From Botryllus schlosseri (taxonomy: Eukaryota), in NCBI GenBank assembly GCA_051294905.1, contig CM119373.1, forward strand, positions 30,318,001-30,382,000: a stretch of DNA of 64,000 bases, given 5' to 3'. The notes under the pieces were generated by a model. That model searched no databases. It had not been told where the DNA came from and saw nothing but the letters and a program-made list of their open reading frames with translations. Position numbers and translations under genes: made by a program. The stretch's first letter is position 1, and every line of letters begins with the position of its first letter. Of this stretch, positions 8,643-56,723 are shown one piece after another.

Positions 8643-9866
8643 GTCACATGAAGAATCCTCAACGATTGCTATACTAATAGCAATAACCACGTGTACATGT
8701 ACATACGTATGCAGCAACTTCATAACACAATCTGAAAATTCATATCAGTATTATTCTCAGTATTGACATCATACCACTATAGAAACCCACGGAATGCATC
8801 TAGTATACACCCGTCAAAAATTAGGACCATTGTTAATCCGGTTAGTGTTCTGTCCGTCCACGTTATGTATTAGGCAGTTGGCAGTAGGGATGGTGTGAAC
8901 CTCTGAAAGGTTCAGGTTCGTGTGAACGCGAACCTTTTTGAAAGGTTCTGTGTGAACACGAACGTGAACCTCGTGACGTCATATTGCCAATTCCAACCCT
9001 ATCTTCCAATGAAGTGATAGCCTATATTAATGTACACCAGTGGTTCTTAACCTTGCCTCCAGCGCCCCCCAAGGGGCGCTGGCGATTTTGAAGGGGGCGG
9101 AAACGCTCAGGGGGCGATATGGGGGGCGCTGGGCTCAGGGGGCGGTATGGAGGGGGGGCGCTGGAGAAAAATGGCTTCGCAGTAGATGATGTGGTGGTAG
9201 GACATACCCTTAATGAGTATTCACAGTTAATTAACACCGAAAACTTCGTTATATATAGCCTACAAAAGACATATAGGTTTAATTGTCCATGGGCGCCTAA
9301 ATGACTGGCACCGAATTTTCCTGTCTTGGCAATTCGAACCCCAGAAGACGAATTCCATCTGGCAGGGAAAAATTATATGCCAGTGAAGAAATACCAATTT
9401 GAAATTGTGTACGTCTTTTAGTTTAGTACGATTGGGCGACACGGATATCTAAAACTAGATATTCCTGTTGGGCGATATCCCTGTTGGGCGATTCTATATT
9501 TTTTTGATAAAGCAGACAGGAGGTCACGAAATAACATCATGCAACGAAGTCATACCAACGGGTTCGCCCGCCCGAATATGTTTAAATATTAGTTACGGGC
9601 CCTACAGTTTCCAAGACACCTCACATTGTTCGCTCCACGTTTTGATGAGTCTGCGCACACTCAATAAACTCACTGCGCAGACTCTTGGACAACAGTGCGT
9701 AACGACTAAAAAAAGGTCAAAACTTCGGATTTGTTGTGCGCAACGTAAATTTTCGGAACTAGTGCACTATACACCAACATTACCCGGTCATGGTAAACAC
9801 TTTACTGACTAAGTACTTTTACACGTCATCCTTTTTTCATTTTATAATTCTCTCGAATCTATGTTT

Positions 9867-10104
9867 CATGACTCAGCATATTTCGAGTTACGAGGTTTCA
9901 GTTTTTTCCGTTTACGCCCATTACGTAAAATCCTTCACTAGATACCTATTACAAACGAAGCACCGCCATTCATTTATGCTTCTTTACATAGCTATCTTAC
10001 CATGACTCAGCATATTTCTAGTTACGAGGTTTCAGTTTTTTGCGGTTACGCCCATTACGTAAAATACTTCACTAGATACCTATGACAAACGATGCACCGC
10101 CATT
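9867..10104. repeat. Direct duplication (~105 bp, period 134) in the 3' non-coding end of the retroelement
   Basis: catgactcagcatatttc...gcaccgccatt at 9867 and again at 10001. Each copy contains a TGACTCA (AP-1-type) motif. Confidence 0.9.
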
Positions 10105-10250
10105 TTATTTTTTGTACGCCCAATACCTATCACAATGTTATTCCAAAAATTACCAAATTTGTCACACCGCATTTCAATTCTTCCCTATAACAGACTATAA
10201 AAATCACGCATTTATCTCAAAATCTCAAACACCCATTCTTACCTTCAGAT

Positions 10251-13200
10251 TTAGTCATTCTCCGTTGTGTTCCGTATTACTCTTATCGCCATCCATTGAC
10301 TTGTTCCGTTTCGTCTCCTCGTGTTCCTCATACGACTTAAGGTTCTACGTCGACGACACCTTATACAACCTACCCATAACACAATCAACAGGGCAACCAA
10401 CCCTGTTACCACCAATATTACAACCACTGGTTCCATGATAGGTATCAATTTTGCACCTTCCATAATAATCCTATCGATCAAGGATAATTCTCTTACCTTA
10501 TATCCACCTTCCATCATCACCAGTTCGTGCAGCCATCGAGTATAGTTGTAGTCTACGAAATCTGTGGTTGTCTTTCTCACGGGGGCTCTTGAAAGTCGGG
10601 AATATTCAGGTTCGGGTGATCCCAACCTTTGGTTTTCCTGCCCAGGCAGAGGTGATGCGCCAGCCATCGTTGACTCCAAGGTAGTATTCATTAGCTCGAC
10701 ACTGCTCGAGGACGAGTCGTCTTTGCCGTCCCCTGTTGAATACAAAACAGTTGTTTCGGTACTTACCCTGTGGTTGTGGTCCGGGTTTTGGTAGTCCGTC
10801 CCGATGTCGACTCCGTCATCATCTCTGGAGACCTGCAGAGCATCTGCAGTGGTCACCGGATGCACTCGCGTTGTTGTGGGTTCCTCACCACCGATTTTTG
10901 TCGTTCCCTCGGGCCGGTTACGCGTGCCACTTGGCAATTGTTGCTTCCCATGAGACACATCAGTTCGTTTAACAGTTTTATACCCCCCTTCCTGTTCAGC
11001 CGACGATTGCGATCGTTTAACTTGCACCAGCGTTGTTTGCATCCGCCATCCCAAAGTTCGATGTGGTAGATGTCTCAACGCTGTAGTCTTTGGTACTTTC
11101 GTTGTCAGCCGTTCCACGTTCACCAAAGGGACGACGGCGTCTTCCTGATCCCTTGGAGTCTCGCTCGTTTCGGTAGTGTTGGGGAGAGGGCTAGTCGTTA
11201 CATAGGCAGTTCTACTTGCCTCGGGTGTTGTATTACCGCCTACATGTCGATCGGAGGAACCCTGGTAGGAAACCGTAGTTCCTGCAAAACCGTACCAATC
11301 AGTCTCTACTAACCTTTGGTCGGTTATTTTCGTTTGCGTGGTGGTCTCGTGAGTCATTCTTCTGGTAATTATCGTCTCCGCCGATTTGTTTTGGCTCGCC
11401 AATTCCTTCCCCCGTCTCATGACTTCCTGGTGCGCGGACGGGAACCTTGGTAACGACATTGCTTCAGTGGCAGTCGTTAGCGTTTCCCAAGCCGGAGACG
11501 GTGTCGAGCGGTTGTTTGCTGGTTTCCTTTTTTCACTTGGTGTTACGCCACGCCCATTTCCCAAAGCTTCTGTGTTTGTACTGCCCACCATCATCGAAGT
11601 AGTTTGCGGAACTTCGGGGGTCCATGTGATCCTAGCGTGATGGTTTCCACGGTCATCAGTTGCGGTTAACATCACCGTTCGAGCGGTGGATCTCTCCCCC
11701 GCATTATTCCTATAGGCATATGGCGTATAGACCAGGGAACCCTCACAAAACGTCCCCCGATAGATCCATCGAGACTGAAATAACTTTTCGTCCCCCACTT
11801 CTGCCTGAATTAGCTTTTGTGTGGCCATATAATCCAGAAGTATCGTATTTATTAATTTTACTTGTTCCACTAATGTCGGTCGTAGGGTAAGGTTATACCT
11901 AGTGGATAACTCCTCAAGTTGTCCCCGCGAGACGGGTCTTTCTCGCCGCGTTTCTATGCCTCCCCTTATTCGAACCTTCAGTTGTGACAGTTGTTTCTTT
12001 ATCTCTTCTACGTATTGTACCCCAAGACTGGATAGCCAGTTTTTGATACCCCCCCGTCCATTTCCATCGGGTGTCTCCCGAAACGGGGATAGTATAAACG
12101 TTTCCCACCCTTTTGAAATCAAGCAGGAAGTTTGGTTACCCAGTATTGGTAAATGCATTTCCGTCCGCGTTCGGTTTTCAGGGGCAGCAATTTGCATTGT
12201 ACCTCGCCGGGGGTCCGCAAACACGGCCCGCCCCTCGAAAGGGTCGTATAACACTCTATTGAATATCAGGGCTGTTTTGAGATCTCCAACAGCCGTTGAA
12301 CAAACTTGCCTATCTCCCTTTAGCTCGCACCGCGAACTATTATGCAAAAGAACTGGGTAAGGGTCATACATTGTCATGCCTGAAGGTTGGGGTTTTGCCA
12401 TCGTGCGGAGGAATATCGCATCGGTCTTTCGTCCGTCGAACATCACATACCAATGTTCCGTATATATATCGTTCCTTGCTTGTAGCCATACCAGATTCTC
12501 GCTTATCTTTGGCAGAGGAGCTCTATCGGGCCATTGATTACTAGAAAAGGTTCTTCGCCTATCCGGCGGGTTTCCCATAATACCGGGATCGACTTCCTGT
12601 ATTACAAAATCTAGGGATAAGAAATTCTCAACCGGTTGTTCCCCCACGAAGTAGCACTCTATACAAATTACTCTACTCCGACGTTCTTTGTGAACAACAC
12701 AATGGCTGAATCTATTCTGTCCGATATCCCATCCTCCATGACGCCCGAACCGATAGCGACAATTTGCTTCCACCGTTACATATTGTTCCAACAGGTTTAT
12801 GATCATTGTCTTATATACGGTTAGTCGTTGTAAAGTCTCAAGGGGTAAAGAATACAAGACTCGGGTTTCTACGTACCTCCAAAGATGTATCACTCCCAGT
12901 CTGCCGTTTCGTTGGTATTTTATTTTTTGAGAATAGTAGTCAGTAGGGTTCAGATCCGGCAATATCCACGACTCAGTCCGTCTACACACACACTCCCGTT
13001 CATACGCCCAGGTTTCATCCCAATACCTGGCGTTTTGGGATCCTATGGATGATATGGGTGCCAGTAATTTGTTTAAACTTTGCGGTGCGGCTTTCAACGG
13101 ACCAAACGCCGAGTCGTCAACCTGTATCTGATAGCGACGTCGAATGTCCTTTCGAGGCCAGTCCCCTCCTAACATAAAAAGCCGTGACAAGGGTACCCTT

Positions 13201-13388
13201 TGCGGCTTTGGGGGGACGTCGAAAGGTCTCCATCCCGTAAAATTAAAGTCGTCGATGGACCCCACGGTCATGGCAGATAAGGGTAGTGGGTTTTCGCCAG
13301 TTTGGGCTTTCACAAAACAAGCCCACTGGATTAACAACAGTAATCTTTGTAGTCCTTTCCATTTGTACAGGTAGTTAATTATTGGCAT
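10251..13388 (-). CDS. Second envelope-type glycoprotein (Env surface-domain paralogue + mucin stalk + TM), 1045 aa
   Basis: Signal-like N-terminus. Blocks align with Env (RYW....ER.C.CRR, D.(I/V)IQE(I/V)D, YD..PV, LK.A...V.(F/Y)DP). S/T-rich stalk, TM VVVILVVTGLVALLIVLWVGCI and basic tail. No furin-plus-fusion-peptide motif. Confidence 0.85.
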   Translation of the reverse strand: MPIINYLYKWKGLQRLLLLIQWACFVKAQTGENPLPLSAMTVGSIDDFNFTGWRPFDVPPKPQRVPLSRLFMLGGDWPRKDIRRRYQIQVDDSAFGPLKAAPQSLNKLLAPISSIGSQNARYWDETWAYERECVCRRTESWILPDLNPTDYYSQKIKYQRNGRLGVIHLWRYVETRVLYSLPLETLQRLTVYKTMIINLLEQYVTVEANCRYRFGRHGGWDIGQNRFSHCVVHKERRSRVICIECYFVGEQPVENFLSLDFVIQEVDPGIMGNPPDRRRTFSSNQWPDRAPLPKISENLVWLQARNDIYTEHWYVMFDGRKTDAIFLRTMAKPQPSGMTMYDPYPVLLHNSSRCELKGDRQVCSTAVGDLKTALIFNRVLYDPFEGRAVFADPRRGTMQIAAPENRTRTEMHLPILGNQTSCLISKGWETFILSPFRETPDGNGRGGIKNWLSSLGVQYVEEIKKQLSQLKVRIRGGIETRRERPVSRGQLEELSTRYNLTLRPTLVEQVKLINTILLDYMATQKLIQAEVGDEKLFQSRWIYRGTFCEGSLVYTPYAYRNNAGERSTARTVMLTATDDRGNHHARITWTPEVPQTTSMMVGSTNTEALGNGRGVTPSEKRKPANNRSTPSPAWETLTTATEAMSLPRFPSAHQEVMRRGKELASQNKSAETIITRRMTHETTTQTKITDQRLVETDWYGFAGTTVSYQGSSDRHVGGNTTPEASRTAYVTTSPLPNTTETSETPRDQEDAVVPLVNVERLTTKVPKTTALRHLPHRTLGWRMQTTLVQVKRSQSSAEQEGGYKTVKRTDVSHGKQQLPSGTRNRPEGTTKIGGEEPTTTRVHPVTTADALQVSRDDDGVDIGTDYQNPDHNHRVSTETTVLYSTGDGKDDSSSSSVELMNTTLESTMAGASPLPGQENQRLGSPEPEYSRLSRAPVRKTTTDFVDYNYTRWLHELVMMEGGYKVRELSLIDRIIMEGAKLIPIMEPVVVILVVTGLVALLIVLWVGCIRCRRRRTLSRMRNTRRRNGTSQWMAIRVIRNTTEND

Positions 13389-13468
13389 ATTAATTTAACG
13401 TGAAAATCTGTAATTCATATAGTCGTGTTTAGTTAAGCATGAGGGTTAAGAGAGCTTCGGCGGAGAGG

Positions 13469-16042
13469 TTACCGTCGCACTATGGGCCTGCGTTTTTTGG
13501 AGTAAGATGGTGTCGACGTTATGTACATTGTAAGTTGAGAGTTAGTGTTCCGCCTCTGTACGCTAGATTTTAACTTGGGACAGCATAGGCTGTGATACCT
13601 GACACAACAGAATAAGATAATCACCGCACCCAGTACAAGTCCCAAGGGGAGGAGGATGGATCCGAGGCCCGAAAAAATGCCACTCAGTCCACTTCCAAAT
13701 AGACCTCCGATTGCTCCAAGTCCCTTTTGTAGGAGGTTACCGGCACCGTTCCCGACCGATTCTATCAGACTTCCGGCACCGTTCGCCATTTCTTTTATCG
13801 TTTTGCCAAAGTTCTTCATAAATTCTTCCCCCCCAGCAAACTCGAAGGGGGCTACTGACACATTCTCGTAGCGCCAGTCGGAGATATTTACGAACACACT
13901 TCGGTTCAGGTCCTCCTTCCACACCTGTATACTGAGATCCACTTCTTCTTGAGCCTGGTTTAGACGAAGTCTGTTGGCTCGGAGTTTACCACTGATGTCG
14001 TTTGTCTCATTTACATACGTATCTTTATAGGCGGATAACTGCTGAGCATGCTCTCGCACCCGCAATGTCCCTTTCCGAATCTGTGTGAGATAGACCTTAC
14101 TCGAATCGAATATGGACTTTCCGGTCAAATTAGCCAATTCTTTCATGACCAAGCGGTCGACGGCAAGTTCAGCGTCGCTCACCTCTGTGAAACTTTGAAA
14201 CTGAGCGAGGGTAATGGTAGCCTGTCGTAATATCATTTGTCGGTTTTTCTCCACCATCTTCTGCATCCACACCAATCGTCTGTCCGTCAGTGATGCCCTT
14301 ACCTCCATGTTTTCAACCAATCGGTCCAGCTTTTGTTGTTGCGCTGTTTGGATTTGGGAGAGTTCGTTTATCTTTTTCCCTAGTTCGGTTGATCTCTCCG
14401 TAGCCTGGATCATTCTGTCGTTGATTTGATAACTCAGGTCCTCAGTTTCTTTATGCAGTTGGGAAGATACAGTTGCGACAACAGCGACAACTGACACGAC
14501 GGCAAAGATTAGTGCCAGTAGGCCGAAGAGGAATCGTTTACGTCTACGTTTCCCCCCAATCCTCCTATTATTACGTGCGATGTCCCCTTTTATTTCTATA
14601 GGCCCTCCCGGAAAACGGGGTCGGTTATGCTCAGGGTCGAAGTGTACCTGATCCCAAAAGGCCGCCTTCAACTGAGACCCCCCGACCGGATCCTGACAGC
14701 CGCTACCACTTATCCGCCCCTGACACTTGGGATCATCCGCAACCAAAGAGGGGTGCTTCCGCCAAACGGGTAGTATGTCGTAAGGTGCGGATGGTCTTTC
14801 GGAAGGTCCGTCAAACAGGTTGTCCCAATCCAGGCCTTGGTCATCTCGACCTTCCCAGTTTGGTAAGGACGCCTGTATCCATCTAATCCTTCGAGGAAAC
14901 TTCGTTGTGGGCAAATCCCCCCATCTACTCGTGTTCCCGATCGGCCAGAGATTACACGATGGGGGATGTCCAATGTCGCGATGGCCTTTCCCTTTCAATT
15001 GCTGGAAATCTTGCCAAAGGTATTCATAGTTTTCCTGGGTGATCAGCCCTGATGTATTTCGGCAGTTTAGCATGTGGTACCACTCACGTTCCCACGCAGA
15101 ATCCGCACGGACTGTATCTATTTCCTGTATTATTATATCCGCTTGACTCGGTTCCAAAGCAGAGATTATCCCTGTGATATCGCAAAATACGCATTTGCCA
15201 CGAGACCCTGATGATGACGATACTAAGCGTCTGGTTGTCGTGCCGGTCTTCAAGTCATAGGTCGTAGAGTAAGTTTTGGACCAAAGTCGATTTTCCGGCC
15301 AGCAGTGTGCAATACTCGAGCTACTGGCGTTGTATTTATTCCATTGATCTACTTGGGTCCAGTTCCACGTATCTTTTGTCATGCGCTCTGTTCTGCAAGT
15401 CGATCTCACCGCCGAAAAACCCGCGAAGGTTCGTAACATGATCAATTTGAATTTGGTCATCGCCATTATAGTATCGTTCACATGGGAATCACCGTCCACG
15501 CCAAACGCAGACTTCCATCTCTTCCTAGTGGCTTCCCAGGTCTCTTCCCAAAACCACCGTATCCTGACCCCATGCCCTATTGGGCGTACGAACACAGTTT
15601 CTTGGTCAAGAACGGCAAATGTTAGGTTTGGCGAAATTTGGCCTAGTTTTCGTCGGCATAGGCAGGTTCGTTCAAAGTCCCGTACATTCGACCAATATCG
15701 CCCTTGCGGGAACGCCATTTGCTGCAATGACACCCGTTCGGCCACCACGTAACCGAAAGATTCACTATGAAAGAGTGTTGGTCGCCTATACACGTGACGA
15801 TTCCCTGTCTTATTGAAAGCGCTCATTAGGTCGTAGGTTTCCCATTGCGTATTATTCAGCCGAACCCAGTCGTCAGGTAGTGAGCCGTTGAATTCACCCA
15901 GGGTACCCTGAGTAAAGGTTCGGGCCCTGTTTGCTACAGTATCTCCGGATCTTGGCACGAAGTCCGCCGCCTCAGACAACAAGCAATCAGATGTGCAACT
16001 GAAACCAATAACGACAGGCAGAATATAAATAGCGTAGTCCAT
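13469..16042 (-). CDS. env: Envelope fusion glycoprotein, class-I-like
   Basis: First in-frame ATG (MDYAIYILPVVIGFS) is signal-like. Many N-x-S/T sequons. Polybasic KRRRKR (14534-14551) is followed directly by hydrophobic FLFGLLALIFAVVSVVAVVATVS. Heptad-rich helical region, Gly-rich pre-TM segment, TM ILLPLGLVLGAVIILFCCV and short tail. Confidence 0.9.
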   Translation of the reverse strand: MDYAIYILPVVIGFSCTSDCLLSEAADFVPRSGDTVANRARTFTQGTLGEFNGSLPDDWVRLNNTQWETYDLMSAFNKTGNRHVYRRPTLFHSESFGYVVAERVSLQQMAFPQGRYWSNVRDFERTCLCRRKLGQISPNLTFAVLDQETVFVRPIGHGVRIRWFWEETWEATRKRWKSAFGVDGDSHVNDTIMAMTKFKLIMLRTFAGFSAVRSTCRTERMTKDTWNWTQVDQWNKYNASSSSIAHCWPENRLWSKTYSTTYDLKTGTTTRRLVSSSSGSRGKCVFCDITGIISALEPSQADIIIQEIDTVRADSAWEREWYHMLNCRNTSGLITQENYEYLWQDFQQLKGKGHRDIGHPPSCNLWPIGNTSRWGDLPTTKFPRRIRWIQASLPNWEGRDDQGLDWDNLFDGPSERPSAPYDILPVWRKHPSLVADDPKCQGRISGSGCQDPVGGSQLKAAFWDQVHFDPEHNRPRFPGGPIEIKGDIARNNRRIGGKRRRKRFLFGLLALIFAVVSVVAVVATVSSQLHKETEDLSYQINDRMIQATERSTELGKKINELSQIQTAQQQKLDRLVENMEVRASLTDRRLVWMQKMVEKNRQMILRQATITLAQFQSFTEVSDAELAVDRLVMKELANLTGKSIFDSSKVYLTQIRKGTLRVREHAQQLSAYKDTYVNETNDISGKLRANRLRLNQAQEEVDLSIQVWKEDLNRSVFVNISDWRYENVSVAPFEFAGGEEFMKNFGKTIKEMANGAGSLIESVGNGAGNLLQKGLGAIGGLFGSGLSGIFSGLGSILLPLGLVLGAVIILFCCVRYHSLCCPKLKSSVQRRNTNSQLTMYITSTPSYSKKRRPIVRR

Positions 16043-16188
16043 TGAGGTGGTATAGGCGTCGGTCCCCAATGCATAGGCTTACTATTCTATATTGAATATG
16101 ATTTAATTATTGTCTGCAAAAATAGAAACATACATTGTCCGGTCTCTGGTTAACTTCCTTTCTTTATGGTGAAAGGCTACTCTGGGCT

Positions 16189-17238: not shown

Positions 17239-20200
17239 CTAGGCCATGTTCTCCATCAGTATACACTCTGACGGTATAGGCCCCTCGCACAATACTACTT
17301 CGCGATTATGCGACTGTAAGAGTCGTAGACCTATCCTTCTGAGATCGCTCGCTCTCATTCTCAGAACTGTTTTACGCCCACGTGTCTTTGTTGTGTCAAC
17401 TTTACTCAAATGGACGAACCGCCGGTCCATCCTGCGTAATTCGGTATTCATGATTTGACGGGCAGTTTCATCAGTCGTTATGTGATACAGCATGCCATCG
17501 CCCAAGTATTCTTCGTACGGAGGTGGCATCCCTTTGGTGTGCCCGTGTGCTGCAGCCAGGCCTTCATTTGACATCACTGCCCTGTTGCAATTTGCCATGA
17601 TATCTTTGATTTTAGTTATCCCGAGGTCTTGTCGCAGCTTGTCATTGATTATTCCGTGAACTTCCTTCCAGGAGTGGTATCCATCGACAGAGTTTGCGCA
17701 ATACTCGTGTCGACAGTGGAACATCAGTGCTCGCTGTATTTTCTCTTGTTGAGATTCCTTTTGCCCCGGGAGGGTGGCCCAGACATGCGGATCATCATTC
17801 CCCGCCGCCATTTCCATCCAATAGGATCGGGACAATCCATCCGACGTAAACACTTGTAACGTGCTTAAATGGATTACCTCTTTTATCTGAAATCCGGAGA
17901 GATGGTTTAGCCACCTTTGAATCAATGGCTTTGGACTCGGGTTTTTCGCTTCATCCGTCATTCTTTTCAGGAGCCCAAAAACTCCCATGTTGTCAGTAAT
18001 TATAGTGAAGGGTAAGGCGCGCAGCATCGACTGCCATTTCTCCACCGAATCCTTCAGGGCTTTAAGCTCTTTGGTGCATGGGTCATAGGCTTTCGCCGTC
18101 GAAGTTACCCACTTTTGACTGTAGTAAGCGATCGGATACACCTCTTTGAAAGGGGGTCTTTCCCCCACATCCGTTTGGAAAATTACGGAGCCGAATCCTA
18201 CATCTGATGCATCAGTTTCCACGAAAATAGGAAGTCCTGGATCCAGATGATACAATACCTTGGTACTGTCGAGTGAGGCTTGAGCTATTTTGTAGTCTTG
18301 CAATAATTCTTCGGTCCAAAGCACCGGTGTTATTTTTCCTCGAGTCGCTGGGACTTTTCCCGTTAGCGCATCAAATTTTGCCAACTTCAAGCTCAACTCT
18401 GGGATGTGCTCCGAGATGTAGCGTAGAGCGCCAATCCATCCACGTAATTCATATATATTTCGGGGTGGTGAAAGCTCCCGCAGAGCCCTTATCCTCTCGG
18501 GCTGGACCTCGATTTCTTTTCCCGTCAAGGTCGCTCCTAGCAGATTTACTCTCCGTTTTCCAATAAAGCATTTATTGATGCTGAGCGTCAATTTCATTTT
18601 AGCAAGTTGTTCAAATACCAGCCGCAGAAGCAGCAAATGGTCTTCTACCGTTTTTGTGCTAAGGAAAATGTCGTCTATGTAGGCCTCCATAGGCGTCGCA
18701 TTCTCCTCATCCGATCGGCCATTTTGCTTCATGTGTTGGCGATACTTTTCCGTGATGGGTTTCACCACGCATTCTTGCATGTTAGCGCTCCAAAGAGCCA
18801 CAGCGGTCTTCAATCCCATCACCATCTTGCGCCACCTTACGTGCATTCCTTTGATTGCTATCCCCACATATTGCTTGGATCTTTCCGTGATATCCATGTG
18901 GAAGTAGGCTTTCTTCAAATCTAGAAGAGAGAGTACTTCTCTACCCTGGGCGAGTTGCTTTACGTCTGGTACTAACGGTGGAGGGACCTCGATTGACTTT
19001 ATAGCAGCATTCAGGGGCTGGAGATTCTGTACGACTCTCCATGATTGCTTCCACCCGTCCTCTTGCTTCTGTCTTTCATTCATTTTTTGTGGGACGACAA
19101 AGATGGCCAGTTTCCACTCGGCAAATCCTTGCTCGATTATCCCCAGGTCCAAGAAGTTGTCCACTGCTTCTTTTAACGCCTTCGCCTGGCCCTCCCCTTT
19201 CAGATTATAAGGTCCAGAAACAAAAGGCTTAGTCGAGGGATCCTTGAGTTCTATGTCACACTTATACTTCATGGCTTGAGGGGCTCGTAAGTGGCCGCAC
19301 AGGTCCTCTAGTTCAGCTGCGAAAGGCTCATAGACGGCTTTCCAAACTTCGTCGGCAATGATGGTATTTTCCGGGGTCGTTAGATCAGGAGGTTTGTATG
19401 GAAGTTTCGCTAGTGCTACCGATTGTGCACAGAGATTTTCGAGCTCCGTCTTAACGCTAGGACTGGTACTTTGTTGTAAGGTGTACGTGGTAACAGGGCC
19501 AATTATCGGCCGATGCGAATCACGTGAAAAACGGGGTTTTGGTGTTGGTGGAGAGGGGGCGAGGTTCTTCGTTGTCAGCGGGGATTCCCTACCTATCCAA
19601 TCTGACCTCTGAACTCGGTGCGTGCCCACACCTACCGTCACGCCGACGGACTCAATCTCCGCCGGGGGCCCTGTTTCTGGGGAGACGTGCATCTTAAAAT
19701 CCCCAGACTCCTTGTCGGACGGTCCTGGACATACGTCCGGTTGACCAACAATAGCTGCTTCGTTTGAACCCTTTGGGAAGTTACTCATAACTGTGGCTGT
19801 CGTCCTGCATCTTTGGGCCGAATTGTTACAGTTATTCGGACAAGTGCATCCACGAGAGCTTTCAGGACCAGTTTTCTCGTACAGGTCCTTATTTACGTCA
19901 GCCGGGATTCCGCGCTCGACGTCTTCATTAATGGTGCCAGCAGGGATTCCTGTCTCGACACTAGGGGTTTCCCGTAGGTTTTTTTCGACGTTAGTGGTAT
20001 TTACCAACCCGTCGTCCGCGCCAGTGGCGATTGCCATCTCGACACTTGCGCCAGCGGCGACGGCCGGCAATGATGACCGGCGCGCCGACTCGACGCTTAT
20101 CTGATTTGCAGCTTCCATCAACCCATCGTCGGTAGCAGCGTTGCAAGGACTGTTTCCGACTCTGGTTCCATCCCGTCGATCGCACGAGATCTCGTCATGT

Positions 20201-20709
20201 AGTGTTACTAAAGACAACTCTTCGTTTGCATTAGACGGAGTTTTGAATTCAGTCGTTATGTTCGGTAATTGTTGTACCTGATCAATCCATTTTAACCCAA
20301 TAATATTGAGAGGGACTCCTTTCCCGGTTGCAAATGGAACCGGTAGTCCATCGAAATCAATTATTACCAAGGAGTCAACGTGGGAAGAGCCCCCTATGCC
20401 GCGTAATTTCATGTCTAAGGGTTGTCGCTCCTCCCAGCTTCGTGGGTATTTGGTCTTAACAACACTTTTCATTATTAAATTGGGGATGCTTCCCGTGTCG
20501 GCCAAGAATTTAGTTTCCGTTGTGGTGTCAACCAAGTACAAGAGCCGACCGCCGAATAACTCCGTAAAGTCTGGCTGTAGTGGGTTATCCGGTGTATCAA
20601 GAAATGTAAATAGGGGTAGAGAAGCATTATGTACAGTTTTTGCGTGTTGGGGTAATAAGTTATCTGGGAGCTGATTTACCGGATCAATCAGCACCCCCAG
20701 TCGTTTTTT
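17239..20709 (-). CDS. pol: Pol polyprotein: aspartic protease, spacer, reverse transcriptase, RNase H, Tpt1/KptA-like domain; no integrase
   Basis: FLADTGS and NIIG (retropepsin). LDLKKAYFHM, MGLKTA, YIDDI and KC.IG...V.LLG (RT). TDASD.GFG, AYYS, ELKAL, TDN and DGLSR (RNase H). C-terminal CRH...HGHT...LYHIT...RRFVHLS...GPIP. No ATG start; entered by -1 frameshift from gag. Confidence 0.95.
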   Translation of the reverse strand, partial: KKRLGVLIDPVNQLPDNLLPQHAKTVHNASLPLFTFLDTPDNPLQPDFTELFGGRLLYLVDTTTETKFLADTGSIPNLIMKSVVKTKYPRSWEERQPLDMKLRGIGGSSHVDSLVIIDFDGLPVPFATGKGVPLNIIGLKWIDQVQQLPNITTEFKTPSNANEELSLVTLHDEISCDRRDGTRVGNSPCNAATDDGLMEAANQISVESARRSSLPAVAAGASVEMAIATGADDGLVNTTNVEKNLRETPSVETGIPAGTINEDVERGIPADVNKDLYEKTGPESSRGCTCPNNCNNSAQRCRTTATVMSNFPKGSNEAAIVGQPDVCPGPSDKESGDFKMHVSPETGPPAEIESVGVTVGVGTHRVQRSDWIGRESPLTTKNLAPSPPTPKPRFSRDSHRPIIGPVTTYTLQQSTSPSVKTELENLCAQSVALAKLPYKPPDLTTPENTIIADEVWKAVYEPFAAELEDLCGHLRAPQAMKYKCDIELKDPSTKPFVSGPYNLKGEGQAKALKEAVDNFLDLGIIEQGFAEWKLAIFVVPQKMNERQKQEDGWKQSWRVVQNLQPLNAAIKSIEVPPPLVPDVKQLAQGREVLSLLDLKKAYFHMDITERSKQYVGIAIKGMHVRWRKMVMGLKTAVALWSANMQECVVKPITEKYRQHMKQNGRSDEENATPMEAYIDDIFLSTKTVEDHLLLLRLVFEQLAKMKLTLSINKCFIGKRRVNLLGATLTGKEIEVQPERIRALRELSPPRNIYELRGWIGALRYISEHIPELSLKLAKFDALTGKVPATRGKITPVLWTEELLQDYKIAQASLDSTKVLYHLDPGLPIFVETDASDVGFGSVIFQTDVGERPPFKEVYPIAYYSQKWVTSTAKAYDPCTKELKALKDSVEKWQSMLRALPFTIITDNMGVFGLLKRMTDEAKNPSPKPLIQRWLNHLSGFQIKEVIHLSTLQVFTSDGLSRSYWMEMAAGNDDPHVWATLPGQKESQQEKIQRALMFHCRHEYCANSVDGYHSWKEVHGIINDKLRQDLGITKIKDIMANCNRAVMSNEGLAAAHGHTKGMPPPYEEYLGDGMLYHITTDETARQIMNTELRRMDRRFVHLSKVDTTKTRGRKTVLRMRASDLRRIGLRLLQSHNREVVLCEGPIPSECILMENMA
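20664..20709 (-). promoter_or_regulatory. -1 programmed ribosomal frameshift signal (gag-pol)
   Basis: A_AAA_AAC heptamer in gag phase (20709-20703). It is followed by the hairpin CUGGG-GGU-GCUGAUU / AAUCAGC-U-CCCAG (20700-20664). pol is in the -1 frame. Confidence 0.85.
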
Positions 20710-23546
20710 GAGAGTCTCAAGCCTTGTTCTAGTTCCTCATCCGTCCAATGCGAGGCGTCATAGCGACGTGGAGGACGGCGATATAGCGGTTCCGTCCAGG
20801 CCACTCGGCTATTGCCCTGGTTCGGTTGTTCAGGTGGACCCTGAGGACCCCACTGATCCCTATCATGCCAGTGGGTTCTATCTCTATTTTTTGGCCTAGA
20901 GTCATAATAGGCCTCGCACAAGGCAGTTCTCTGTGTCAGAGAGGGAGAACCTTGGGTGGCCAGGTATCGGTCGAGGTCCGGGACCGTCAATATGTTATTC
21001 CTTGCAAGGAAAGGCTCCCAGTTGCGTTTTGTGGACTCCTTAACGCGTGGGGGTACCGGTCGTATTCGTTTGCGAACTACCCAACCTAAGGTATCATCCT
21101 TGGCAATCACCTCCTCATTTAGCCAAAGCACGAATTTTGCCACGCAATTACGGGATTGGTGTCCCGGGGCCTTACAATAATAACATACGGATAAGGACTG
21201 CCCCTGAGGGGGGTTCAGATACAAGCCTAATGGGGCGAAGATGTTGGGGTTCCCCAGAAAATTATATCTCTCACCTTGGCTCTCCGCGATGCGGAGGGCT
21301 TCCTGACTGCTAGACGGCGTGATTTCCTGGCTGTCCCCGCCGATTCCAGAGTCCTGTGTATTCATCATTCGAGGTCTTCGGTTCGAAGTACTTGGCCCCT
21401 GACTTGTCTGAGGAGATCTGGAGTTCCGTGTTGGTGGAACGTTCGGTCCATTCGATGCGTTGCGCCCATTTTGTGTTCGGGAAGGTTTGGCCCTGGGAGC
21501 CGGGCCCTGTCTGCCAAACCCATTTCCACTTATTACATTGGTAGGAAAACGGTTGGTCTTTGCGCCGCGAGGAGGGCCACGTCGTGGCTGCGAAGCTTGC
21601 CCGGCGCTGACGGGCTGCCGTGGCGACATATTCCCGGACGGTCTGGGTGGTGTCCCTTCGATCATGTGTGGAGGTTGTCGGGGTGAGGGTGGTTGCACCA
21701 TCGGAGGTGGTGATGTAGTCGGTGGAGGTGGAGTGTTTAATCGCCCATCTTCACCCCCGTGAGTAGGGTAACTGTGCATCATGGGTCCCGCCGGCTGAAC
21801 ATTATATATATGTACAGGTGGTAGGGGCGACGTTGTTTCGCGCGTCTTTCTGACTTCCCGAGCGGTGGGACGCACCTCTTGTTCATCCAAAAACTCAGAA
21901 TTCCAGTACAACTGTAAATCCTCCGCCACGTCTTGCCAGGGCCTGCTATCCCATCCCCGCATTAGCAGTCTAAGTGCTTCTGGTAATCGTTGTCTTAGGT
22001 TTCGGAAAAGCCGCAGCCCATCCGGATTCTCCTTGATTTCAGCCTCCATGTCTATCTCTAGTTGTTTTAGGGCGCTGTTCAACAGCGGAAGAGGTTCGTC
22101 TTCCCACTGATAATTCCTACGGAAATCGTTGATGACCTTTTCATTGTTAACCAAGCCTTGCGGGTTGGATAGCGACAATGATTTCATGACCGAGACCCAT
22201 TTCGCATTTCCCGAGTTGGTGTTGAAGAAATTCCCTAGCTGATTAGCTTGTTTGAGGCGGCCCGCACTTCGCAACTTCTTCTGCATGGCATTGGCCAGGA
22301 TTATATCTGTATCAGTGTCACCCTCGCCGTGTCGTATACGTTTCATCGTATTAGCCATCCACTTTAGAAGGGGCATATCCCCAGGGTCCATCATTAGCTG
22401 AAGCATCTCCTTTTCCGACTGGAACCTTTCGGGCGTAGTTAACACCGGGTTCACGGCATCATTCCGTGGTTGATCTCGTGGAAGTCTCGGCCTCCCTTCG
22501 CTCTCTCTCGGAGTAGATGCGTATCGAGGTAACCTGAGGTACTCAGAGATGTCTGACATATTCTCTTCAGGTTCGATTGGGTTGGGCCGACCAGAGTCTC
22601 GCTGAAGCATGCGTGTGGTCTCCCGAATGGCCTCCCGCGCCTCCGTTATTTGTCTACCCAATCTGTCCAATTGGGCATCAGTATCTTCACCAGAGTCCTC
22701 AGGATCGTCGCTACCGTCTTGTCGGTAGTTCGTTCTCCCTTCTTGAAAGGTAACGCGTCTTGTTGGAGTGCTGGCCGCACCTTGTGTCCTGGTTCGGGTT
22801 CCTTCAGTTGCCCGTTGATCGCCGAGCCATGCCCCGAGCCGTTCTCGAGCGCGTGCATAGCCATCGTCCGAATCGGTGTCGGTTCCGGTTTCCCTCAGCC
22901 GGTATAGACTGGGTGTATCTGCTAGGTTCCCCCTCCGTCGTCCGTGGCGTGTCCCATTTCGAACCGGGAAGCATGGAGTCGTTCCTGGGCGGGAATCTGA
23001 CGGCGACTCCGGCTTGGAACCTGGTAACGTAGGGTAGACTGCCGTCACAGTATGGCAATCCAGGCCCTTTTCGACTGTAAACGTGGGTAGGGGCGCTGTC
23101 GCCCTGGGCGGTTCCCCAACGGGTGGGTCATACGCCGGTGGAGGTGCTGTAGCCATTACGGACAGAGAAGGTGGAGTCGGTGGTTTATCCCCAACCACCT
23201 GTGCATGGGCTTTGCCCAGCTCAAATTCCGATTTCAAGATTTCATTGAGGACTTCAGTAGAGACTTTCCCGCCGACCTTCGAAGTGGCATCACATACCGC
23301 TTTCAGGTCGGCTTGAGCTCGTCTGACTTCCTTTTTGGCCTTTTCCAGACCCTTCATTGTCTCGGGCAGAGTTGATTTGACCTCTTTTAGTACTTTCGTT
23401 TGGTCAGCCACGTCTTTTGCCAACTGTCTTTCTTGTTGTCTGACGTCTTCGTGGCGTTTTTGCGTGGCTTTCAGCAGCTTGATGCCCTGCTCGAGCTCGC
23501 CTGCCGCCTTTGACGACTTACTCTTCTTTTTAAATAATTTTAGCAT
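20688..23546 (-). CDS. gag: Gag-like polyprotein
   Basis: Basic N-terminus, coiled coil, PPPAY late-domain-type motif, central helical (capsid-like) region, Pro-rich region and CYYCKAPGHQSRNC (CX2CX4HX4C) knuckle. Lies directly upstream of pol. First ATG at 23546. Confidence 0.9.
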   Translation of the reverse strand: MLKLFKKKSKSSKAAGELEQGIKLLKATQKRHEDVRQQERQLAKDVADQTKVLKEVKSTLPETMKGLEKAKKEVRRAQADLKAVCDATSKVGGKVSTEVLNEILKSEFELGKAHAQVVGDKPPTPPSLSVMATAPPPAYDPPVGEPPRATAPLPTFTVEKGLDCHTVTAVYPTLPGSKPESPSDSRPGTTPCFPVRNGTRHGRRRGNLADTPSLYRLRETGTDTDSDDGYARARERLGAWLGDQRATEGTRTRTQGAASTPTRRVTFQEGRTNYRQDGSDDPEDSGEDTDAQLDRLGRQITEAREAIRETTRMLQRDSGRPNPIEPEENMSDISEYLRLPRYASTPRESEGRPRLPRDQPRNDAVNPVLTTPERFQSEKEMLQLMMDPGDMPLLKWMANTMKRIRHGEGDTDTDIILANAMQKKLRSAGRLKQANQLGNFFNTNSGNAKWVSVMKSLSLSNPQGLVNNEKVINDFRRNYQWEDEPLPLLNSALKQLEIDMEAEIKENPDGLRLFRNLRQRLPEALRLLMRGWDSRPWQDVAEDLQLYWNSEFLDEQEVRPTAREVRKTRETTSPLPPVHIYNVQPAGPMMHSYPTHGGEDGRLNTPPPPTTSPPPMVQPPSPRQPPHMIEGTPPRPSGNMSPRQPVSAGQASQPRRGPPRGAKTNRFPTNVISGNGFGRQGPAPRAKPSRTQNGRNASNGPNVPPTRNSRSPQTSQGPSTSNRRPRMMNTQDSGIGGDSQEITPSSSQEALRIAESQGERYNFLGNPNIFAPLGLYLNPPQGQSLSVCYYCKAPGHQSRNCVAKFVLWLNEEVIAKDDTLGWVVRKRIRPVPPRVKESTKRNWEPFLARNNILTVPDLDRYLATQGSPSLTQRTALCEAYYDSRPKNRDRTHWHDRDQWGPQGPPEQPNQGNSRVAWTEPLYRRPPRRYDASHWTDEELEQGLRLSKNDWGC

Positions 23547-23599
23547 TTTTCGCACAGTTCATGTAACTTTTGATTGCCTGTATTTTGGTCCCGTACCTT

Positions 23600-23935
23600 T
23601 TATTGGCTAGGGGGAGTACCGTTACGGATTAGATTACCCGCGGACGTGGTTTTGTTGTTCTCGATCACTCGCCCTCGAGTTGCAGGTACGGAATATCTTC
23701 CGAAGAAAACTGGGTCGGTGTCGTTGGCGATTACCACAGCAAATCCGTTGCGTGGGACAGTGAGGGCTTCGGCCGTTGTAGTGACGTCGTTAGAGAGGTC
23801 TTCAGGAGTTGTCGTAGGAAAGAATACCGGCACGAGGTGTACGTAGACCGATGCCAATGTTATAAGCAGAGATATCACAGAAGTGATTACCGTCACGCCG
23901 AGCACGATTTTCACGAGGGTCGTCCTTGCACACAT
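23600..23935 (-). CDS. Small leader-encoded membrane protein (111 aa)
   Basis: ATG-initiated ORF between PBS and gag. One hydrophobic helix, then a Thr-rich tail with NDT, NKT and NGT sequons. Not in frame with gag. Confidence 0.6.
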   Translation of the reverse strand: MCARTTLVKIVLGVTVITSVISLLITLASVYVHLVPVFFPTTTPEDLSNDVTTTAEALTVPRNGFAVVIANDTDPVFFGRYSVPATRGRVIENNKTTSAGNLIRNGTPPSQ

Positions 23936-23964
23936 TAATAGGTCAATGTTTTTACACCGGAAAT

Positions 23965-23982
23965 ATCCCAGTGGTGCCTCCA
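23965..23982 (-). promoter_or_regulatory. Primer-binding site complementary to tRNA-Thr
   Basis: Minus strand TGGAGGCACCACTGGGAT. 17/18 match to the 3' end of animal tRNA-Thr(AGU), ...AUCCCAGCGGUGCCUCCA, recalled from the vertebrate sequence. Canonical position upstream of gag. Confidence 0.8.
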
Positions 23983-24199
23983 GTAGTGTCTTTATAGTGC
24001 AGCCCCAGTAACGATTGTTATGCGGGTCGTCTACACTTGGTTCGGATTACTTCGCGGTGAGGAATTGACCTTCTATTGCACTGTATTGTCCAGACGACGT
24101 CCGTAGATATTGATTGAAGTAGCGGTAGTTGCGATAGTTGCAGTAGTTGTATCTTTGAGCATCAGCCAATGACCCTTAGGTCCAGTGTTCTAATCTAGC

Positions 24200-24610
24200 C
24201 TTATATAACGTGTAAATAAGCCTTACTTAATACAACCAAATACTCCAATCATTATCATGCAGACAGAATGAGGTATCTAAGCAAAACTCGGTTAATATTG
24301 GCATATAGAATATCCATCAATTATAACACAAGATAAAGCTTAAACCTATTCATATTCATGCACGATTAAATGTATTTTAAATACTCCAAGGTTTGTTTTC
24401 GCATACAAACAATGCGACGGCCTTTCCTGCCGAAGTCGTATCTTTGAGGGTTTGTTAACACATATAAATAATGTGACGGCCTTTCCTGCCGTAAAATAGC
24501 TCCATGGGTTTGTTTACACATATAATACATGTGACGGCCTGTCCTGCCGTAAAGCAGCTCCAAGGTTAGTTTGCACATATGAGTATGTGCCGGCCTTTCC
24601 TGCCGTAAAG
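24200..24610 (-). promoter_or_regulatory. Putative 5' LTR/U3 region: TATA-like box plus four ~58-bp tandem repeats
   Basis: Minus-strand TATATAA near 24202-24208. Tandem units (24384-24610) with core atg(c/t)gacggcctttcctgccg. Promoter function is inferred from position only. Confidence 0.55.
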
Positions 24611-56515: not shown

Positions 56516-56723
56516 TGGTGTGAACCTCTGAAAGGTTCAGGTTCGTGTGAACGCGAACCTTTTTGAAAGGTTCTGTGTGAACACGAACGTGAACCTCGTG
56601 ACGTCAAGTGACGTCATATTGCTAATTCCAACCCTATCCTTCAATGAAATGATAGCCTTGTACACGATACCTATAGTGACGACTCGGGCAACATAGCGTC
56701 ACAATGCTGAAGTATATATTGAC

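What the first reader, a model, noticed from the sequence alone, without database searches (positions are those of the whole stretch)
9830..24610. Enveloped retrovirus-like element whose integrase appears replaced by a Merlin/IS1595-family DNA transposase
Seen: PBS, gag, pro-RT-RNase H and env are all open, yet Pol has no HHCC zinc finger or rve-type D,D(35)E core. At the position where integrase normally sits there is a complete-looking ISXO2/Merlin-type transposase (Zn ribbon, DET, TDG, HTN..E) on the same strand and in the same frame. It has no TIRs or TSD of its own that I could find. Established: LTR retroelements and retroviruses integrate with rve integrases, DIRS-type elements use tyrosine recombinases, and Merlin/IS1595 enzymes belong to cut-and-paste DNA transposons. 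Inference: this may be a lineage of enveloped reverse-transcribing viruses that recruited a different DDE enzyme for integration. I do not recall this architecture being described, but I could not search for it.
Basis: partly seen in the sequence, partly recalled or inferred. Interest (0 to 1): 0.96.

Follow-up and report, generated by a model that had tools for sequence, protein, structure and literature searches.

The report
Integrase-less enveloped retroelement carrying Merlin transposase
An intact virus-like retroelement in an unidentified, probably invertebrate, genome has no retroviral integrase and no long terminal repeats; between its polymerase and envelope genes it keeps a conserved "cut-and-paste" DNA transposase gene, a combination I could not find described.

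Summary
The observation largely holds. On the minus strand at about 9.9-24.6 kb lie five uninterrupted genes: gag (CCHC knuckle), pol (protease, RT, RNase H), an IS1595/Merlin DDE transposase, and two envelope-like glycoproteins. No rve integrase and no LTRs were found.

- The integrase position at the Pol C-terminus is held by a Tpt1/KptA-like domain.
- The transposase is a separate gene. A splice-acceptor-like motif sits at the same place upstream of it in all five copies. The shared frame with pol is particular to this copy.
- A PBS could not be confirmed.

The transposase is not a nested Merlin insertion:
- Five diverged copies from three sequencing runs keep the order Tnp-envA. One 7-kb contig spans pol-Tnp-envA-envB.
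- The transposases are 59-67% identical, their synonymous sites are saturated, and they form a clade in 100 of 100 bootstraps.
- The zinc-ribbon and DDE(K) residues are intact.
- No TIRs flank the gene.

Sister elements (Pol 38-43% identical) also lack integrase and LTRs. They carry a CUB-domain gene in the same slot and are multi-copy. The lineage was therefore integrase-less before it gained the transposase, and it can spread without one.

That the transposase performs integration is an inference (about 0.45). The element's ends and its target-site duplication remain undefined.

The parts
9873..24614 (-). Provisional span of the element. The ends are not established; the true left end lies between 9626 and 10250 and the right end at or beyond about 24610.
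   Evidence: GC step. A host repeat ends at 9625. Repeat arrays sit at both sides. A candidate 8-base direct repeat lies just outside this span, but it is at chance level.
24379..24610 (-). Four tandem copies of a 58-nt unit upstream of the TATA-like box. Each copy contains a short hairpin. They may be enhancer-like or protein-binding repeats.
24199..24207 (-). TATA-like box, read by eye; no promoter tool for eukaryotes was available.
23600..23935 (-). 111-codon ORF in the leader with an N-terminal membrane segment and 3 N-glycosylation sequons. Its status is unknown.
23591..23601 (-). Donor-like AAG|GTACGG motif about 45 nt upstream of the gag ATG. Relatives L001-L003 have a similar AG|GT motif just upstream of gag.
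23515..23525 (-). The only GTAAGT donor consensus in the 5' 4.7 kb. It lies 8 codons plus 1 base into gag, and its phase fits the transposase acceptor.
20688..23546 (-). gag, 952 codons from the first ATG, open throughout. The CCHC knuckle is at 21144-21185.
   Evidence: It has homologues in L001-L003.
20703..20709 (-). A AAA AAC slippery heptamer in the gag/pol overlap, followed by a local hairpin. This is a candidate site for a programmed -1 frameshift.
   Evidence: The fold z-score over 104 nt is not significant.
17239..20736 (-). pol, open throughout. Protease DTGS is at 20488-20499, RT roughly 18526-19062 with YIDD at 18670-18681, and RNase H roughly 17890-18318.
17287..17748 (-). Tpt1/KptA-like (RNA 2'-phosphotransferase family) domain at the C-terminus of Pol, where integrase normally sits.
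17151..17160 (-). Pyrimidine tract plus CAG: a splice-acceptor-like site 17 nt before the first conserved transposase codon. It is at the same position in all 5 copies.
16189..17150 (-). IS1595/Merlin-type DDE transposase gene. The frame is open from 17238. The zinc ribbon is at 16951-17034 and the DDE domain roughly 16309-16698.
16114..16125 (-). Acceptor-like site before envA, shared by 5 copies.
13469..16042 (-). envA, the putative fusion glycoprotein. It has a signal peptide, 14 N-glycosylation sequons and a single RRKR site. That site is followed directly by a hydrophobic segment, then heptad repeats, a C-terminal membrane anchor and a short tail.
13408..13418 (-). Acceptor-like site before envB, shared with L010.
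10251..13388 (-). envB, a second glycoprotein. Its N-terminal domain is a distant paralogue of envA. It has a Ser/Thr-rich middle, a C-terminal membrane anchor and a basic tail.
9867..10109 (-). 3' non-coding region: AATAAA at 10104-10109 and two 104-nt repeats, 94% identical, with starts 134 nt apart.

Best explanation
This is an intact copy of an undescribed lineage of enveloped, reverse-transcribing virus-like elements of the Ty3/gypsy-Caulimoviridae-Retroviridae kind.

Shown by the sequence and its relatives:
- The element encodes gag and a Pol with protease, RT, RNase H and a Tpt1-like domain. It also encodes a Merlin/IS1595 DDE transposase and two glycoproteins: a furin-cleaved, class-I-like fusion protein (envA) and a mucin-like protein (envB).
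- It has no rve integrase and no LTRs.
- The transposase is a long-standing gene of the element that is kept under selection.

Inferred from sequence signals:
- Gag-Pol is made by a -1 frameshift.
- The transposase, envA and envB are made from spliced subgenomic RNAs that use conserved acceptors.

Inferred mechanism:
- Particles reverse-transcribe the RNA into DNA.
- The DDE transposase inserts that DNA into chromosomes, and perhaps excises it again. It has a zinc-binding N-terminal domain and an RNase H-like core that resemble a retroviral integrase in fold.
- It would thereby do the job that the lineage's Pol cannot do.
For: Architecture.

No integrase.

No LTRs or TIRs.

The transposase is a complete family member:
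- Pfam and NCBIfam matches.
- All 22 nearly invariant columns of a 70-sequence family alignment are kept, including C69, C72, C93, C96, D177, D241, E279 and K286.
- The AlphaFold model has pLDDT 88.6.
- Its fold neighbours are retroviral integrases (NTD plus core) and Mos1.

The transposase is integral to the element:
- All five diverged copies keep Tnp-envA. L005 (7 kb) has pol-Tnp-envA-envB. The copies come from three sequencing runs.
- dN is 0.10-0.42 while dS is saturated; the one measurable pair gives dN/dS of 0.05.
- The element-borne transposases form a clade in 100 of 100 NJ bootstraps.
- GC and GC3 match the neighbouring genes.
- About 120 nt of spacer on each side leaves no room for TIRs.

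Expression:
- A pyrimidine tract plus CAG lies exactly 17 nt before the conserved start in 5 of 5 copies.
- The ordered part of the model begins there.
- Similar acceptors precede envA and envB, and precede the CUB gene of the sister elements.
- Donor-like sites lie near the gag ATG.

RT placement: a Pol profile matches the cauliflower mosaic virus RT best (1.9e-32), then Ty3 (1.9e-27), then foamy, gamma-retroviral and HIV RTs.
Against: - No TIRs, which Merlin/IS1595 enzymes need, were found at the element's ends. The only flanking direct repeat, of 8 bases, is at chance level.
- A sister family with no transposase, no integrase and no LTRs has 31 Pol sequences of at least 90% identity on many large contigs. 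Spread within a genome therefore does not need the transposase.
- The promoter-like region lies at the 5' side only and there is no terminal redundancy. How reverse transcription could reproduce a whole copy is unexplained.
- Splicing, frameshifting and catalysis are read from sequence alone. No RNA data were available.
- The envA structure prediction failed (pLDDT 33), so its fusion class rests on sequence features.
Confidence: 0.5

Rival explanations
1. The element belongs to an integrase-less, pararetrovirus-like lineage that enters chromosomes by some other route, either host repair or an unrecognised function of its own. The transposase would then be an accessory gene in the variable slot between pol and env. 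Possible roles are excision, making episomes, or acting on host DNA. It would not be the integration enzyme.
For: - Sister elements L001-L004 have a CUB-domain gene in the same slot. They have no transposase, no integrase and no LTRs, yet they are multi-copy.
- The RT is closest to a caulimovirus RT among solved structures.
- No TIRs were found at the ends.
Against: - The DDE(K) triad and the zinc ribbon are strictly kept under strong purifying selection, which fits a working DNA-cleaving and DNA-joining enzyme.
- The copies seen in relatives begin at gag and end after env rather than being permuted. This argues against random linearisation of circles, although the ends themselves were not resolved.
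Confidence: 0.3
2. The mobile unit is really a Merlin-type DNA transposon that carries a retrovirus-like gene set as cargo, by analogy with Teratorn (piggyBac plus herpesvirus). Chromosomal copies would move as DNA by cut-and-paste. RT, Gag and Env would serve only a particle phase between cells.
For: - The promoter-like region and the repeat arrays at the two ends are not duplicated, so only a DNA route would carry them along.
- The candidate flanking direct repeat is 8 bases long, the Merlin length.
- The nearest other transposases (39-42% identical) also sit in multi-gene, same-strand cassettes. One cassette holds IAP, E2, bHLH and an envA-like gene.
Against: - No TIRs of 12 or more matches out of 16 with a duplication were found.
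- The 8-mer is expected about once by chance, and six of its eight bases belong to the 3' repeat unit.
- gag-pol-env relatives exist without any transposase.
Confidence: 0.15
3. The transposase is a chance nested insertion of an ordinary Merlin transposon into a retroelement, or the arrangement is an assembly chimera.
For: Merlin-like transposases are abundant: 6485 cluster representatives at E <= 0.001.
Against: - The same position and the same neighbours recur in five copies from three independent runs, at 59-67% protein identity.
- The transposases are monophyletic.
- A conserved acceptor precedes the gene in every copy.
- There are no TIRs around the gene and only about 120 nt of spacer on each side.
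- No close free relative exists; the nearest outside the clade is 44% identical.
Confidence: 0.03

Closest known systems
Ty3/gypsy (Metaviridae) elements with env, e.g. errantiviruses, and Retroviridae
   Same: gag with a CCHC knuckle; Pol ordered protease-RT-RNase H; a -1 gag/pol overlap; downstream env expressed from spliced RNA. The RT-RNase H matches Ty3 and retroviral enzymes.
   Different: No rve integrase, no LTRs, no TG...CA ends. A Tpt1-like domain sits at the Pol C-terminus. There are two glycoprotein genes and a Merlin-type transposase gene.
Caulimoviridae (plant pararetroviruses)
   Same: They have no integrase and no LTRs. The cauliflower mosaic virus RT is the best-scoring solved RT for this Pol (PMC11363490).
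   Different: Caulimoviruses are non-enveloped plant viruses with circular episomal DNA, a movement protein and no transposase. Here there are two envelope glycoproteins, an apparently animal host and chromosomal copies with intact genes. A best PDB score is not a phylogeny.
DIRS-like retrotransposons (DIRS, Ngaro, PAT, VIPER)
   Same: They are the precedent for a gypsy-related RT element that uses a non-rve enzyme for integration (PMC12440569).
   Different: DIRS elements use a tyrosine recombinase. They have inverted or split direct terminal repeats and lack protease and env. Here there was no recombinase match and no such repeats.
Merlin / IS1595 DNA transposons
   Same: The protein is a full-length family member with the ribbon and D, D, E(x6)K. 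It is 36% identical to a Ciona intestinalis protein of Merlin size.
   Different: Merlin elements are 1-3 kb, have TIRs and make 8-9-bp duplications (my own knowledge of Feschotte 2004). Here the gene lies inside a 14.7-kb retrovirus-like unit without detectable TIRs.
Teratorn (piggyBac transposon fused with a herpesvirus)
   Same: A virus genome that carries a cut-and-paste transposase gene and lives in chromosomes (PMC5601938, PMC10175614).
   Different: Teratorn is a 180-kb DNA virus with piggyBac TIRs and TTAA duplications. The element here is a reverse-transcribing one with a different transposase superfamily and no TIRs found.

Membership tests
IS1595/Merlin transposase (protein) | DDE_Tnp_IS1595 catalytic domain over its full length | tested here: met
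   Pfam PF12762 at 1e-12. NCBIfam IS1595 at 4e-20 covering 2-212 of 215; its 72.5 bits is just under the 75-bit curated cut-off.
IS1595/Merlin transposase (protein) | N-terminal CxxC...CxxC zinc ribbon and the D, D, E(x6)K catalytic residues | tested here: met
   C69, C72, C93, C96, D177, D241, E279 and K286 are kept. These columns are at least 90% conserved in 70 family members.
IS1595/Merlin transposase (protein) | RNase H-like DDE fold | tested here: met
   AlphaFold pLDDT 88.6. Foldseek finds retroviral integrases and Mos1 at E of about 1e-5 with probability 1.0.
Merlin/IS1595 transposon (element) | Terminal inverted repeats at the ends of the mobile unit | tested here: not met
   No inverted pair better than 14 of 16, and that pair has no duplication. 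Shared terminal k-mers are at shuffle level. None flank the gene itself.
Merlin/IS1595 transposon (element) | 8-9-bp target-site duplication | tested here: inconclusive
   One 8-mer occurs at 9865-9872 and 24615-24622. About one such match is expected by chance, and only one copy is available.
LTR retrotransposon / retrovirus (Metaviridae, Retroviridae) | gag plus Pol with protease, RT and RNase H in that order | tested here: met
LTR retrotransposon / retrovirus (Metaviridae, Retroviridae) | rve-type integrase (HHCC finger plus D,D(35)E core) | tested here: not met
   No Pfam rve match in any ORF. The integrase parts of 26 Pol proteins align nowhere in 9-26 kb.
LTR retrotransposon / retrovirus (Metaviridae, Retroviridae) | Long terminal repeats | tested here: not met
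   No direct repeat joins 8.0-10.7 kb with 23.3-26.5 kb at word size 7. Relatives L001-L004 have none either.
LTR retrotransposon / retrovirus (Metaviridae, Retroviridae) | tRNA primer-binding site next to the 5' LTR, and a polypurine tract | not tested
   No tRNA gene in the window or the loci to compare with. Sequences from memory were not used.
DIRS-like retrotransposons | Tyrosine recombinase gene, with inverted or split direct terminal repeats | tested here: not met
   No recombinase family match. No such repeats.
Caulimoviridae-like pararetrovirus | RT-RNase H of the caulimovirus clade | tested here: inconclusive
   The caulimovirus RT is the best PDB match. No phylogeny with reference sequences could be made.
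Caulimoviridae-like pararetrovirus | Episomal circular DNA genome with a terminally redundant pregenomic RNA | not testable with these tools
   Needs sequencing reads or RNA data from the host.
Tpt1/KptA RNA 2'-phosphotransferase (Pol C-terminal domain) | PF01885 domain over its full length | tested here: met
   28.2 bits (gathering score 26), covering 2-176 of 177. NCBIfam 6e-13. PDB 9ld3 at 1e-5, and 1e-10 with a profile.
Tpt1/KptA RNA 2'-phosphotransferase (Pol C-terminal domain) | Catalytic Arg-His-Arg-Arg tetrad (residue roles are from my own knowledge of Tpt1) | tested here: not met
   The Arg of the '...RA..GHS' motif is replaced in all six lineage sequences. The window copy also lacks the Arg of the Arg-His pair. 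The His and the last Arg are kept.

The most novel reading that the evidence does not exclude
A previously unrecognised family-level lineage of enveloped reverse-transcribing viruses of invertebrates that never had, or long ago lost, the retroviral integrase and LTRs. Its Pol carries a Tpt1-like domain. One branch captured a Merlin-type cut-and-paste transposase and uses it to enter, and perhaps leave, host chromosomes. That would make it a retrovirus-DNA-transposon hybrid: the reverse-transcribing counterpart of Teratorn, and a third solution to integration beside rve integrases and the tyrosine recombinases of DIRS.
Probability: 0.4. Interest if true: 0.95.

Novelty: new variant of a known kind. 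Interest (0 to 1): 0.86.

Why it matters
Every reverse-transcribing element known to integrate on its own account uses one of three kinds of enzyme. These are an rve integrase (LTR elements and retroviruses), a tyrosine recombinase (DIRS), or an endonuclease for target-primed synthesis (LINEs, Penelope).

A retrovirus-like, enveloped element that keeps a Merlin/IS1595 transposase under selection would add a new way of coupling reverse transcription to chromosomal insertion. It would also show that the virus-transposon fusions known for DNA viruses (Teratorn) happen in reverse-transcribing viruses too.

Two things are of interest whatever the transposase does:
- The wider lineage: gag, then protease-RT-RNase H-Tpt1-like Pol, then an accessory gene, then env, with no integrase and no LTRs, yet multi-copy.
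- A Tpt1/KptA-like domain sitting where integrase belongs. Neither is mentioned in the literature I could search.

In practice, LTR-based and TIR-based annotation tools will miss such elements.

Tried and rejected
- **LTR, TIR and TSD searches.** I used repeat finding, blastn at word size 7, an exhaustive TIR-plus-TSD scan and k-mer sharing against shuffles. All gave nothing above chance.
- **Exact look-up of the window's envB protein**, to find more copies in the source genome: it is not on record.
- **Collection scans.** Two scans of viral contigs, one with the transposase alignment and one with the Pol alignment, found nothing. The JGI metagenome scan found one distant 28%-identical transposase.
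- **envA structure.** Only a two-sequence alignment was allowed and the model failed (pLDDT 33). It was not used for a fold search. An envA profile against PDB sequences gave only non-significant hits to coronavirus spike HR1 and influenza HA2 helices.
- **Rfam scan of 9-26 kb:** no match.
- **Frameshift stimulator.** The fold downstream of the slippery site has a z-score of -0.8. Only a local hairpin is seen.
- **Long proteins among the transposase hits** (1.1-1.75 kaa) were tested as possible Pol-transposase fusions. They are chains of several transposase copies with no RT.
- **Codon usage (RSCU)** does not tell the transposase apart from the other genes. It also does not discriminate size-matched pieces of pol, so it carries no weight.
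- **Host identity.** Flanking ORFs have no Pfam match, and the run and analysis accessions are not in the paper library.
- **Literature.** Searches for an RT element with an IS1595/Merlin transposase, or with a Tpt1 domain, found nothing. Troyka, Odin, HEART and Pliego virus are different things.
- **One script timed out** and was redone in a faster form.

Full report
**1. What is there**

The element lies on the minus strand. Five long frames tile 10251-23555 with no internal stop in any of them. Its G+C is 0.47-0.52, against about 0.39 in the flanks. In the order of transcription:

- **Repeat array and promoter-like region.** Four 58-nt tandem repeats lie at 24379-24610. A TATA-like box lies at 24199-24207.
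- **Leader.** About 650 nt long, with a 111-codon ORF for a small membrane protein.
- **gag,** 20688-23546. It has a canonical CX2CX4HX4C knuckle.
- **pol,** 17239-20736, in the -1 frame.
  - An A AAA AAC heptamer sits in the overlap with gag.
  - It has retropepsin motifs, RVT_1 with YIDD, and RT_RNaseH/RT_RNaseH_2.
  - At its C-terminus is a full-length Tpt1/KptA-family domain. When scanned on its own the domain scores 28.2 bits, above Pfam's gathering score. NCBIfam gives 6e-13, and archaeal Tpt1 structures match at 1e-5.
- **Transposase,** 16189-17150.
- **envA,** 13469-16042.
- **envB,** 10251-13388.
- **3' region.** AATAAA at 10104-10109 and two 104-nt repeats.

**2. No integrase, no LTRs**

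- Pfam finds no rve or integrase zinc-finger family in any ORF, even at E = 1.
- Twenty-six integrase-bearing Pol proteins recovered as distant homologues align to the window only through RT-RNase H and the gag knuckle. Their integrase regions find nothing in 9-26 kb.
- No direct or inverted repeat joins the two ends. This was tested by repeat finding, by blastn at word size 7 and by an exhaustive TIR-plus-TSD scan.
- k-mer sharing between the two ends is no higher than in shuffles.
- The left end must lie to the right of 9625, where a host repeat that also occurs at 56.5-59.5 kb stops.
- One 8-base direct repeat lies at the outer edges of the two repeat arrays, at 9865-9872 and 24615-24622. 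It has the length of a Merlin duplication. However, about one such match is expected by chance, and six of its eight bases belong to the 3' repeat unit. I treat it as a lead only.
It could not be tested without a tRNA sequence supplied by a tool.

**3. The transposase**

- The frame matches Pfam DDE_Tnp_IS1595 at 1e-12.
- It matches the NCBIfam IS1595 model over 2-212 of 215 positions at 4e-20. Its 72.5 bits is just under that model's 75-bit curated cut-off.
- An exhaustive HMMER search found 6485 cluster representatives at E <= 0.001. Outside the element's own clade the nearest are 39-44% identical. A named one, from Ciona intestinalis, is 36% identical and 308 residues long.
- In a 70-sequence alignment the window protein keeps every nearly invariant column. 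These include the four ribbon cysteines, D177, D241, E279 and K286.
- The AlphaFold model built on that alignment is confident (pLDDT 88.6, pTM 0.84).
- Its best structural neighbours are retroviral integrases (N-terminal zinc domain plus catalytic core) and the Mos1 transposase.
- The protein is therefore an IS1595/Merlin enzyme by sequence and an integrase-like DDE enzyme by fold.

**4. It belongs to the element**

- Searching with the transposase returned five proteins of 60-67% identity from Logan assemblies. Their contigs show the same neighbours:
  - L005 (7 kb) reads pol (73% identical), transposase (59%), envA (33%), envB (25%).
  - L006, L007 and L008 read transposase (65-67%), then envA (62-68%).
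  - L010 reads envA (78%), then envB (37%).
- Two of these copies come from one run and differ strongly (dN 0.38), so several old lineages carry the gene.
- Synonymous sites are saturated in nine of ten transposase pairs while dN is 0.10-0.42. The one measurable pair has dN/dS of 0.05.
- The element-borne transposases form a clade in 100 of 100 NJ bootstraps. L005 is the most divergent copy for both the transposase and envA.
- The spacers on either side of the gene are about 120 nt and hold no inverted repeats.
- G+C and GC3 equal those of the neighbouring genes.

**5. It is a gene of its own, probably spliced**

- In the window, the transposase frame follows pol's stop codon in the same frame. 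In L005 and L007 the two frames differ.
- In all five copies a pyrimidine tract ending in CAG lies exactly 17 nt before the first conserved codon. The protein sequence upstream of it is not conserved.
- The model is disordered before that point and ordered after it.
- Similar acceptor-like sites precede envA in five copies and envB in two. They also precede the CUB gene of four sister elements.
- The 5' part holds two donor-like sites:
  - an AG|GT motif about 45 nt before the gag ATG, which resembles one in L001-L003;
  - the only GTAAGT consensus, 8 codons plus 1 base into gag. Its phase fits the transposase acceptor, so it could lend the ATG that the conserved transposase N-terminus lacks.
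- This is a model drawn from sequence. No RNA data were available.

**6. The glycoproteins**

- **envA.**
  - It has a signal peptide and 14 N-glycosylation sequons.
  - A single RRKR site is followed at once by a 27-residue hydrophobic stretch, then heptad repeats, a C-terminal anchor and a short tail.
  - This is the layout of a class I viral fusion protein.
  - Sequence-profile hits to spike HR1 and HA2 were not significant, and the structure prediction failed. The fusion class is therefore inferred.
- **envB.**
  - It shares a distant N-terminal domain with envA (E = 5e-6).
  - It has a Ser/Thr-rich middle and a membrane anchor.

**7. The wider lineage**

- The four closest Pol proteins without a transposase are 38-43% identical and come from two ENA assemblies.
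- Their elements read gag, then pol (protease-RT-RNase H-Tpt1-like), then a CUB-domain ORF, then an envA-like gene. They have no integrase and no LTRs.
- Several of these copies are decayed:
  - in L003, gag is in three pieces and env is interrupted once;
  - in L004, pol and env are each split once;
  - in L001 and L002, env is interrupted once.
- One of these families has 31 Pol sequences of at least 90% identity on many contigs of 0.2-1.5 Mb. It is therefore multi-copy in a host genome without any recognised integration enzyme.
- This is the main caveat for the claim that the transposase is the integrase of the element.
- A Pol profile scores the cauliflower mosaic virus RT highest among solved structures (1.9e-32). 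Ty3 follows (1.9e-27), then foamy, gamma-retroviral and HIV RTs. This places the enzyme in the gypsy/caulimovirus/retrovirus cluster, but it is not a phylogeny.
- In the Tpt1-like domain one catalytic arginine position is replaced in all six lineage sequences. The window copy lacks a second. What the domain does is unknown.

**8. Mechanism**

- *Shown:* the gene content, the intactness of the genes, the conservation of the transposase, and the absence of integrase and LTRs.
- *Inferred from sequence signals:* -1 frameshifting for Gag-Pol, spliced subgenomic RNAs, and a furin-activated fusion protein.
- *Inferred by analogy:* the DDE transposase inserts the element's DNA into chromosomes.
- *Unexplained:* the promoter-like region lies only at the 5' side and there is no terminal redundancy. 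The retroviral way of rebuilding both ends cannot apply. Either the true ends and transcription start are not what they seem, or whole copies move as DNA. The latter is the Teratorn-like rival.

**9. Comparison and novelty**

The element works like an env-bearing gypsy element or a retrovirus in its particle and entry genes. It fails two defining tests for LTR elements: integrase and LTRs. It fails the DIRS tests: recombinase and terminal repeats. It fails the Merlin element test: TIRs.

The nearest concepts are DIRS, a gypsy-type RT with a different integration enzyme, and Teratorn, a virus carrying a cut-and-paste transposase (PMC12440569, PMC5601938, PMC10175614). Full-text searches found no report of an RT element with an IS1595/Merlin transposase or with a Tpt1 domain. 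A 2025 survey of virus-like retroelements lists none. That library omits most subscription journals, so the element's being unreported is not proven.

- The consensus lines that the alignment tools print were not used.
- The splice model was checked for reading phase only, and no joined sequence was written out.
- Nothing in the window looked human.
- A bench test of mobilisation is referred, not described.

Noticed in passing
window 17287-17748 (-); L001-L005 Pol C-termini: A Tpt1/KptA-like (RNA 2'-phosphotransferase family) domain ends the Pol of every member of the lineage, where integrase normally sits. One catalytic arginine position is replaced in all six sequences, and the window copy lacks a second.
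   Followed up: partly
L011:2-5664 (Logan SRR25569784): A chain of same-strand, intron-less ORFs: an IAP (three BIR domains plus RING); a Merlin-type transposase 42% identical to the window's; an E2 ubiquitin-conjugating enzyme; a bHLH protein; and an envA-like glycoprotein domain (36% identical). It may be a larger relative with captured host genes. Its upstream part is missing.
   Followed up: partly
L012:232-3166 (Logan SRR23343704): Another related transposase (39% identical) is followed on the same strand by a 151-residue ORF and a homeodomain protein. This is again not the context of a minimal Merlin transposon.
   Followed up: partly
L001:6015-6491, L002:13386-14153, L003:13037-14311, L004:13041-13745: Sister elements carry a CUB-domain ORF, preceded by an acceptor-like site, in the slot between pol and env where the window has the transposase. 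One such family has 31 Pol sequences of at least 90% identity on many large contigs.
   Followed up: partly
L001:10238-10583 and L004:17383-17736: A non-coding block of about 345 nt, 3' of env, is 88% identical between two elements whose coding DNA is only 70-75% identical. It has sharp edges on both sides. It could be a cis-acting region or a shared insertion.
   Followed up: partly
window 23600-23935 (-): A 111-codon ORF in the leader upstream of gag encodes a small protein with an N-terminal membrane segment and three N-glycosylation sequons. Its stop codon abuts a donor-like site. It was not found in distant relatives.
   Followed up: partly
window 24379-24610 and 9867-10104: Different tandem repeats lie just inside the two presumed ends: four 58-nt units, each with a short hairpin, at the 5' side, and two 104-nt units at the 3' side. 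An 8-base direct repeat (9865-9872 and 24615-24622) sits at their outer edges, at chance level.
   Followed up: partly
window 53730-55500 and 61215-62985: A direct repeat of at least 1.77 kb, 99.8% identical, with starts 7485 nt apart. It has few long ORFs. It could be a recent tandem duplication, long repeats of another element, or an assembly artefact.
   Followed up: no
window 8885-9625 versus 56510-59469: The left flank of the element is a host repeat with other copies in the window, partly inverted. It stops at 9625, which sets an outer limit for the element's left end.
   Followed up: partly
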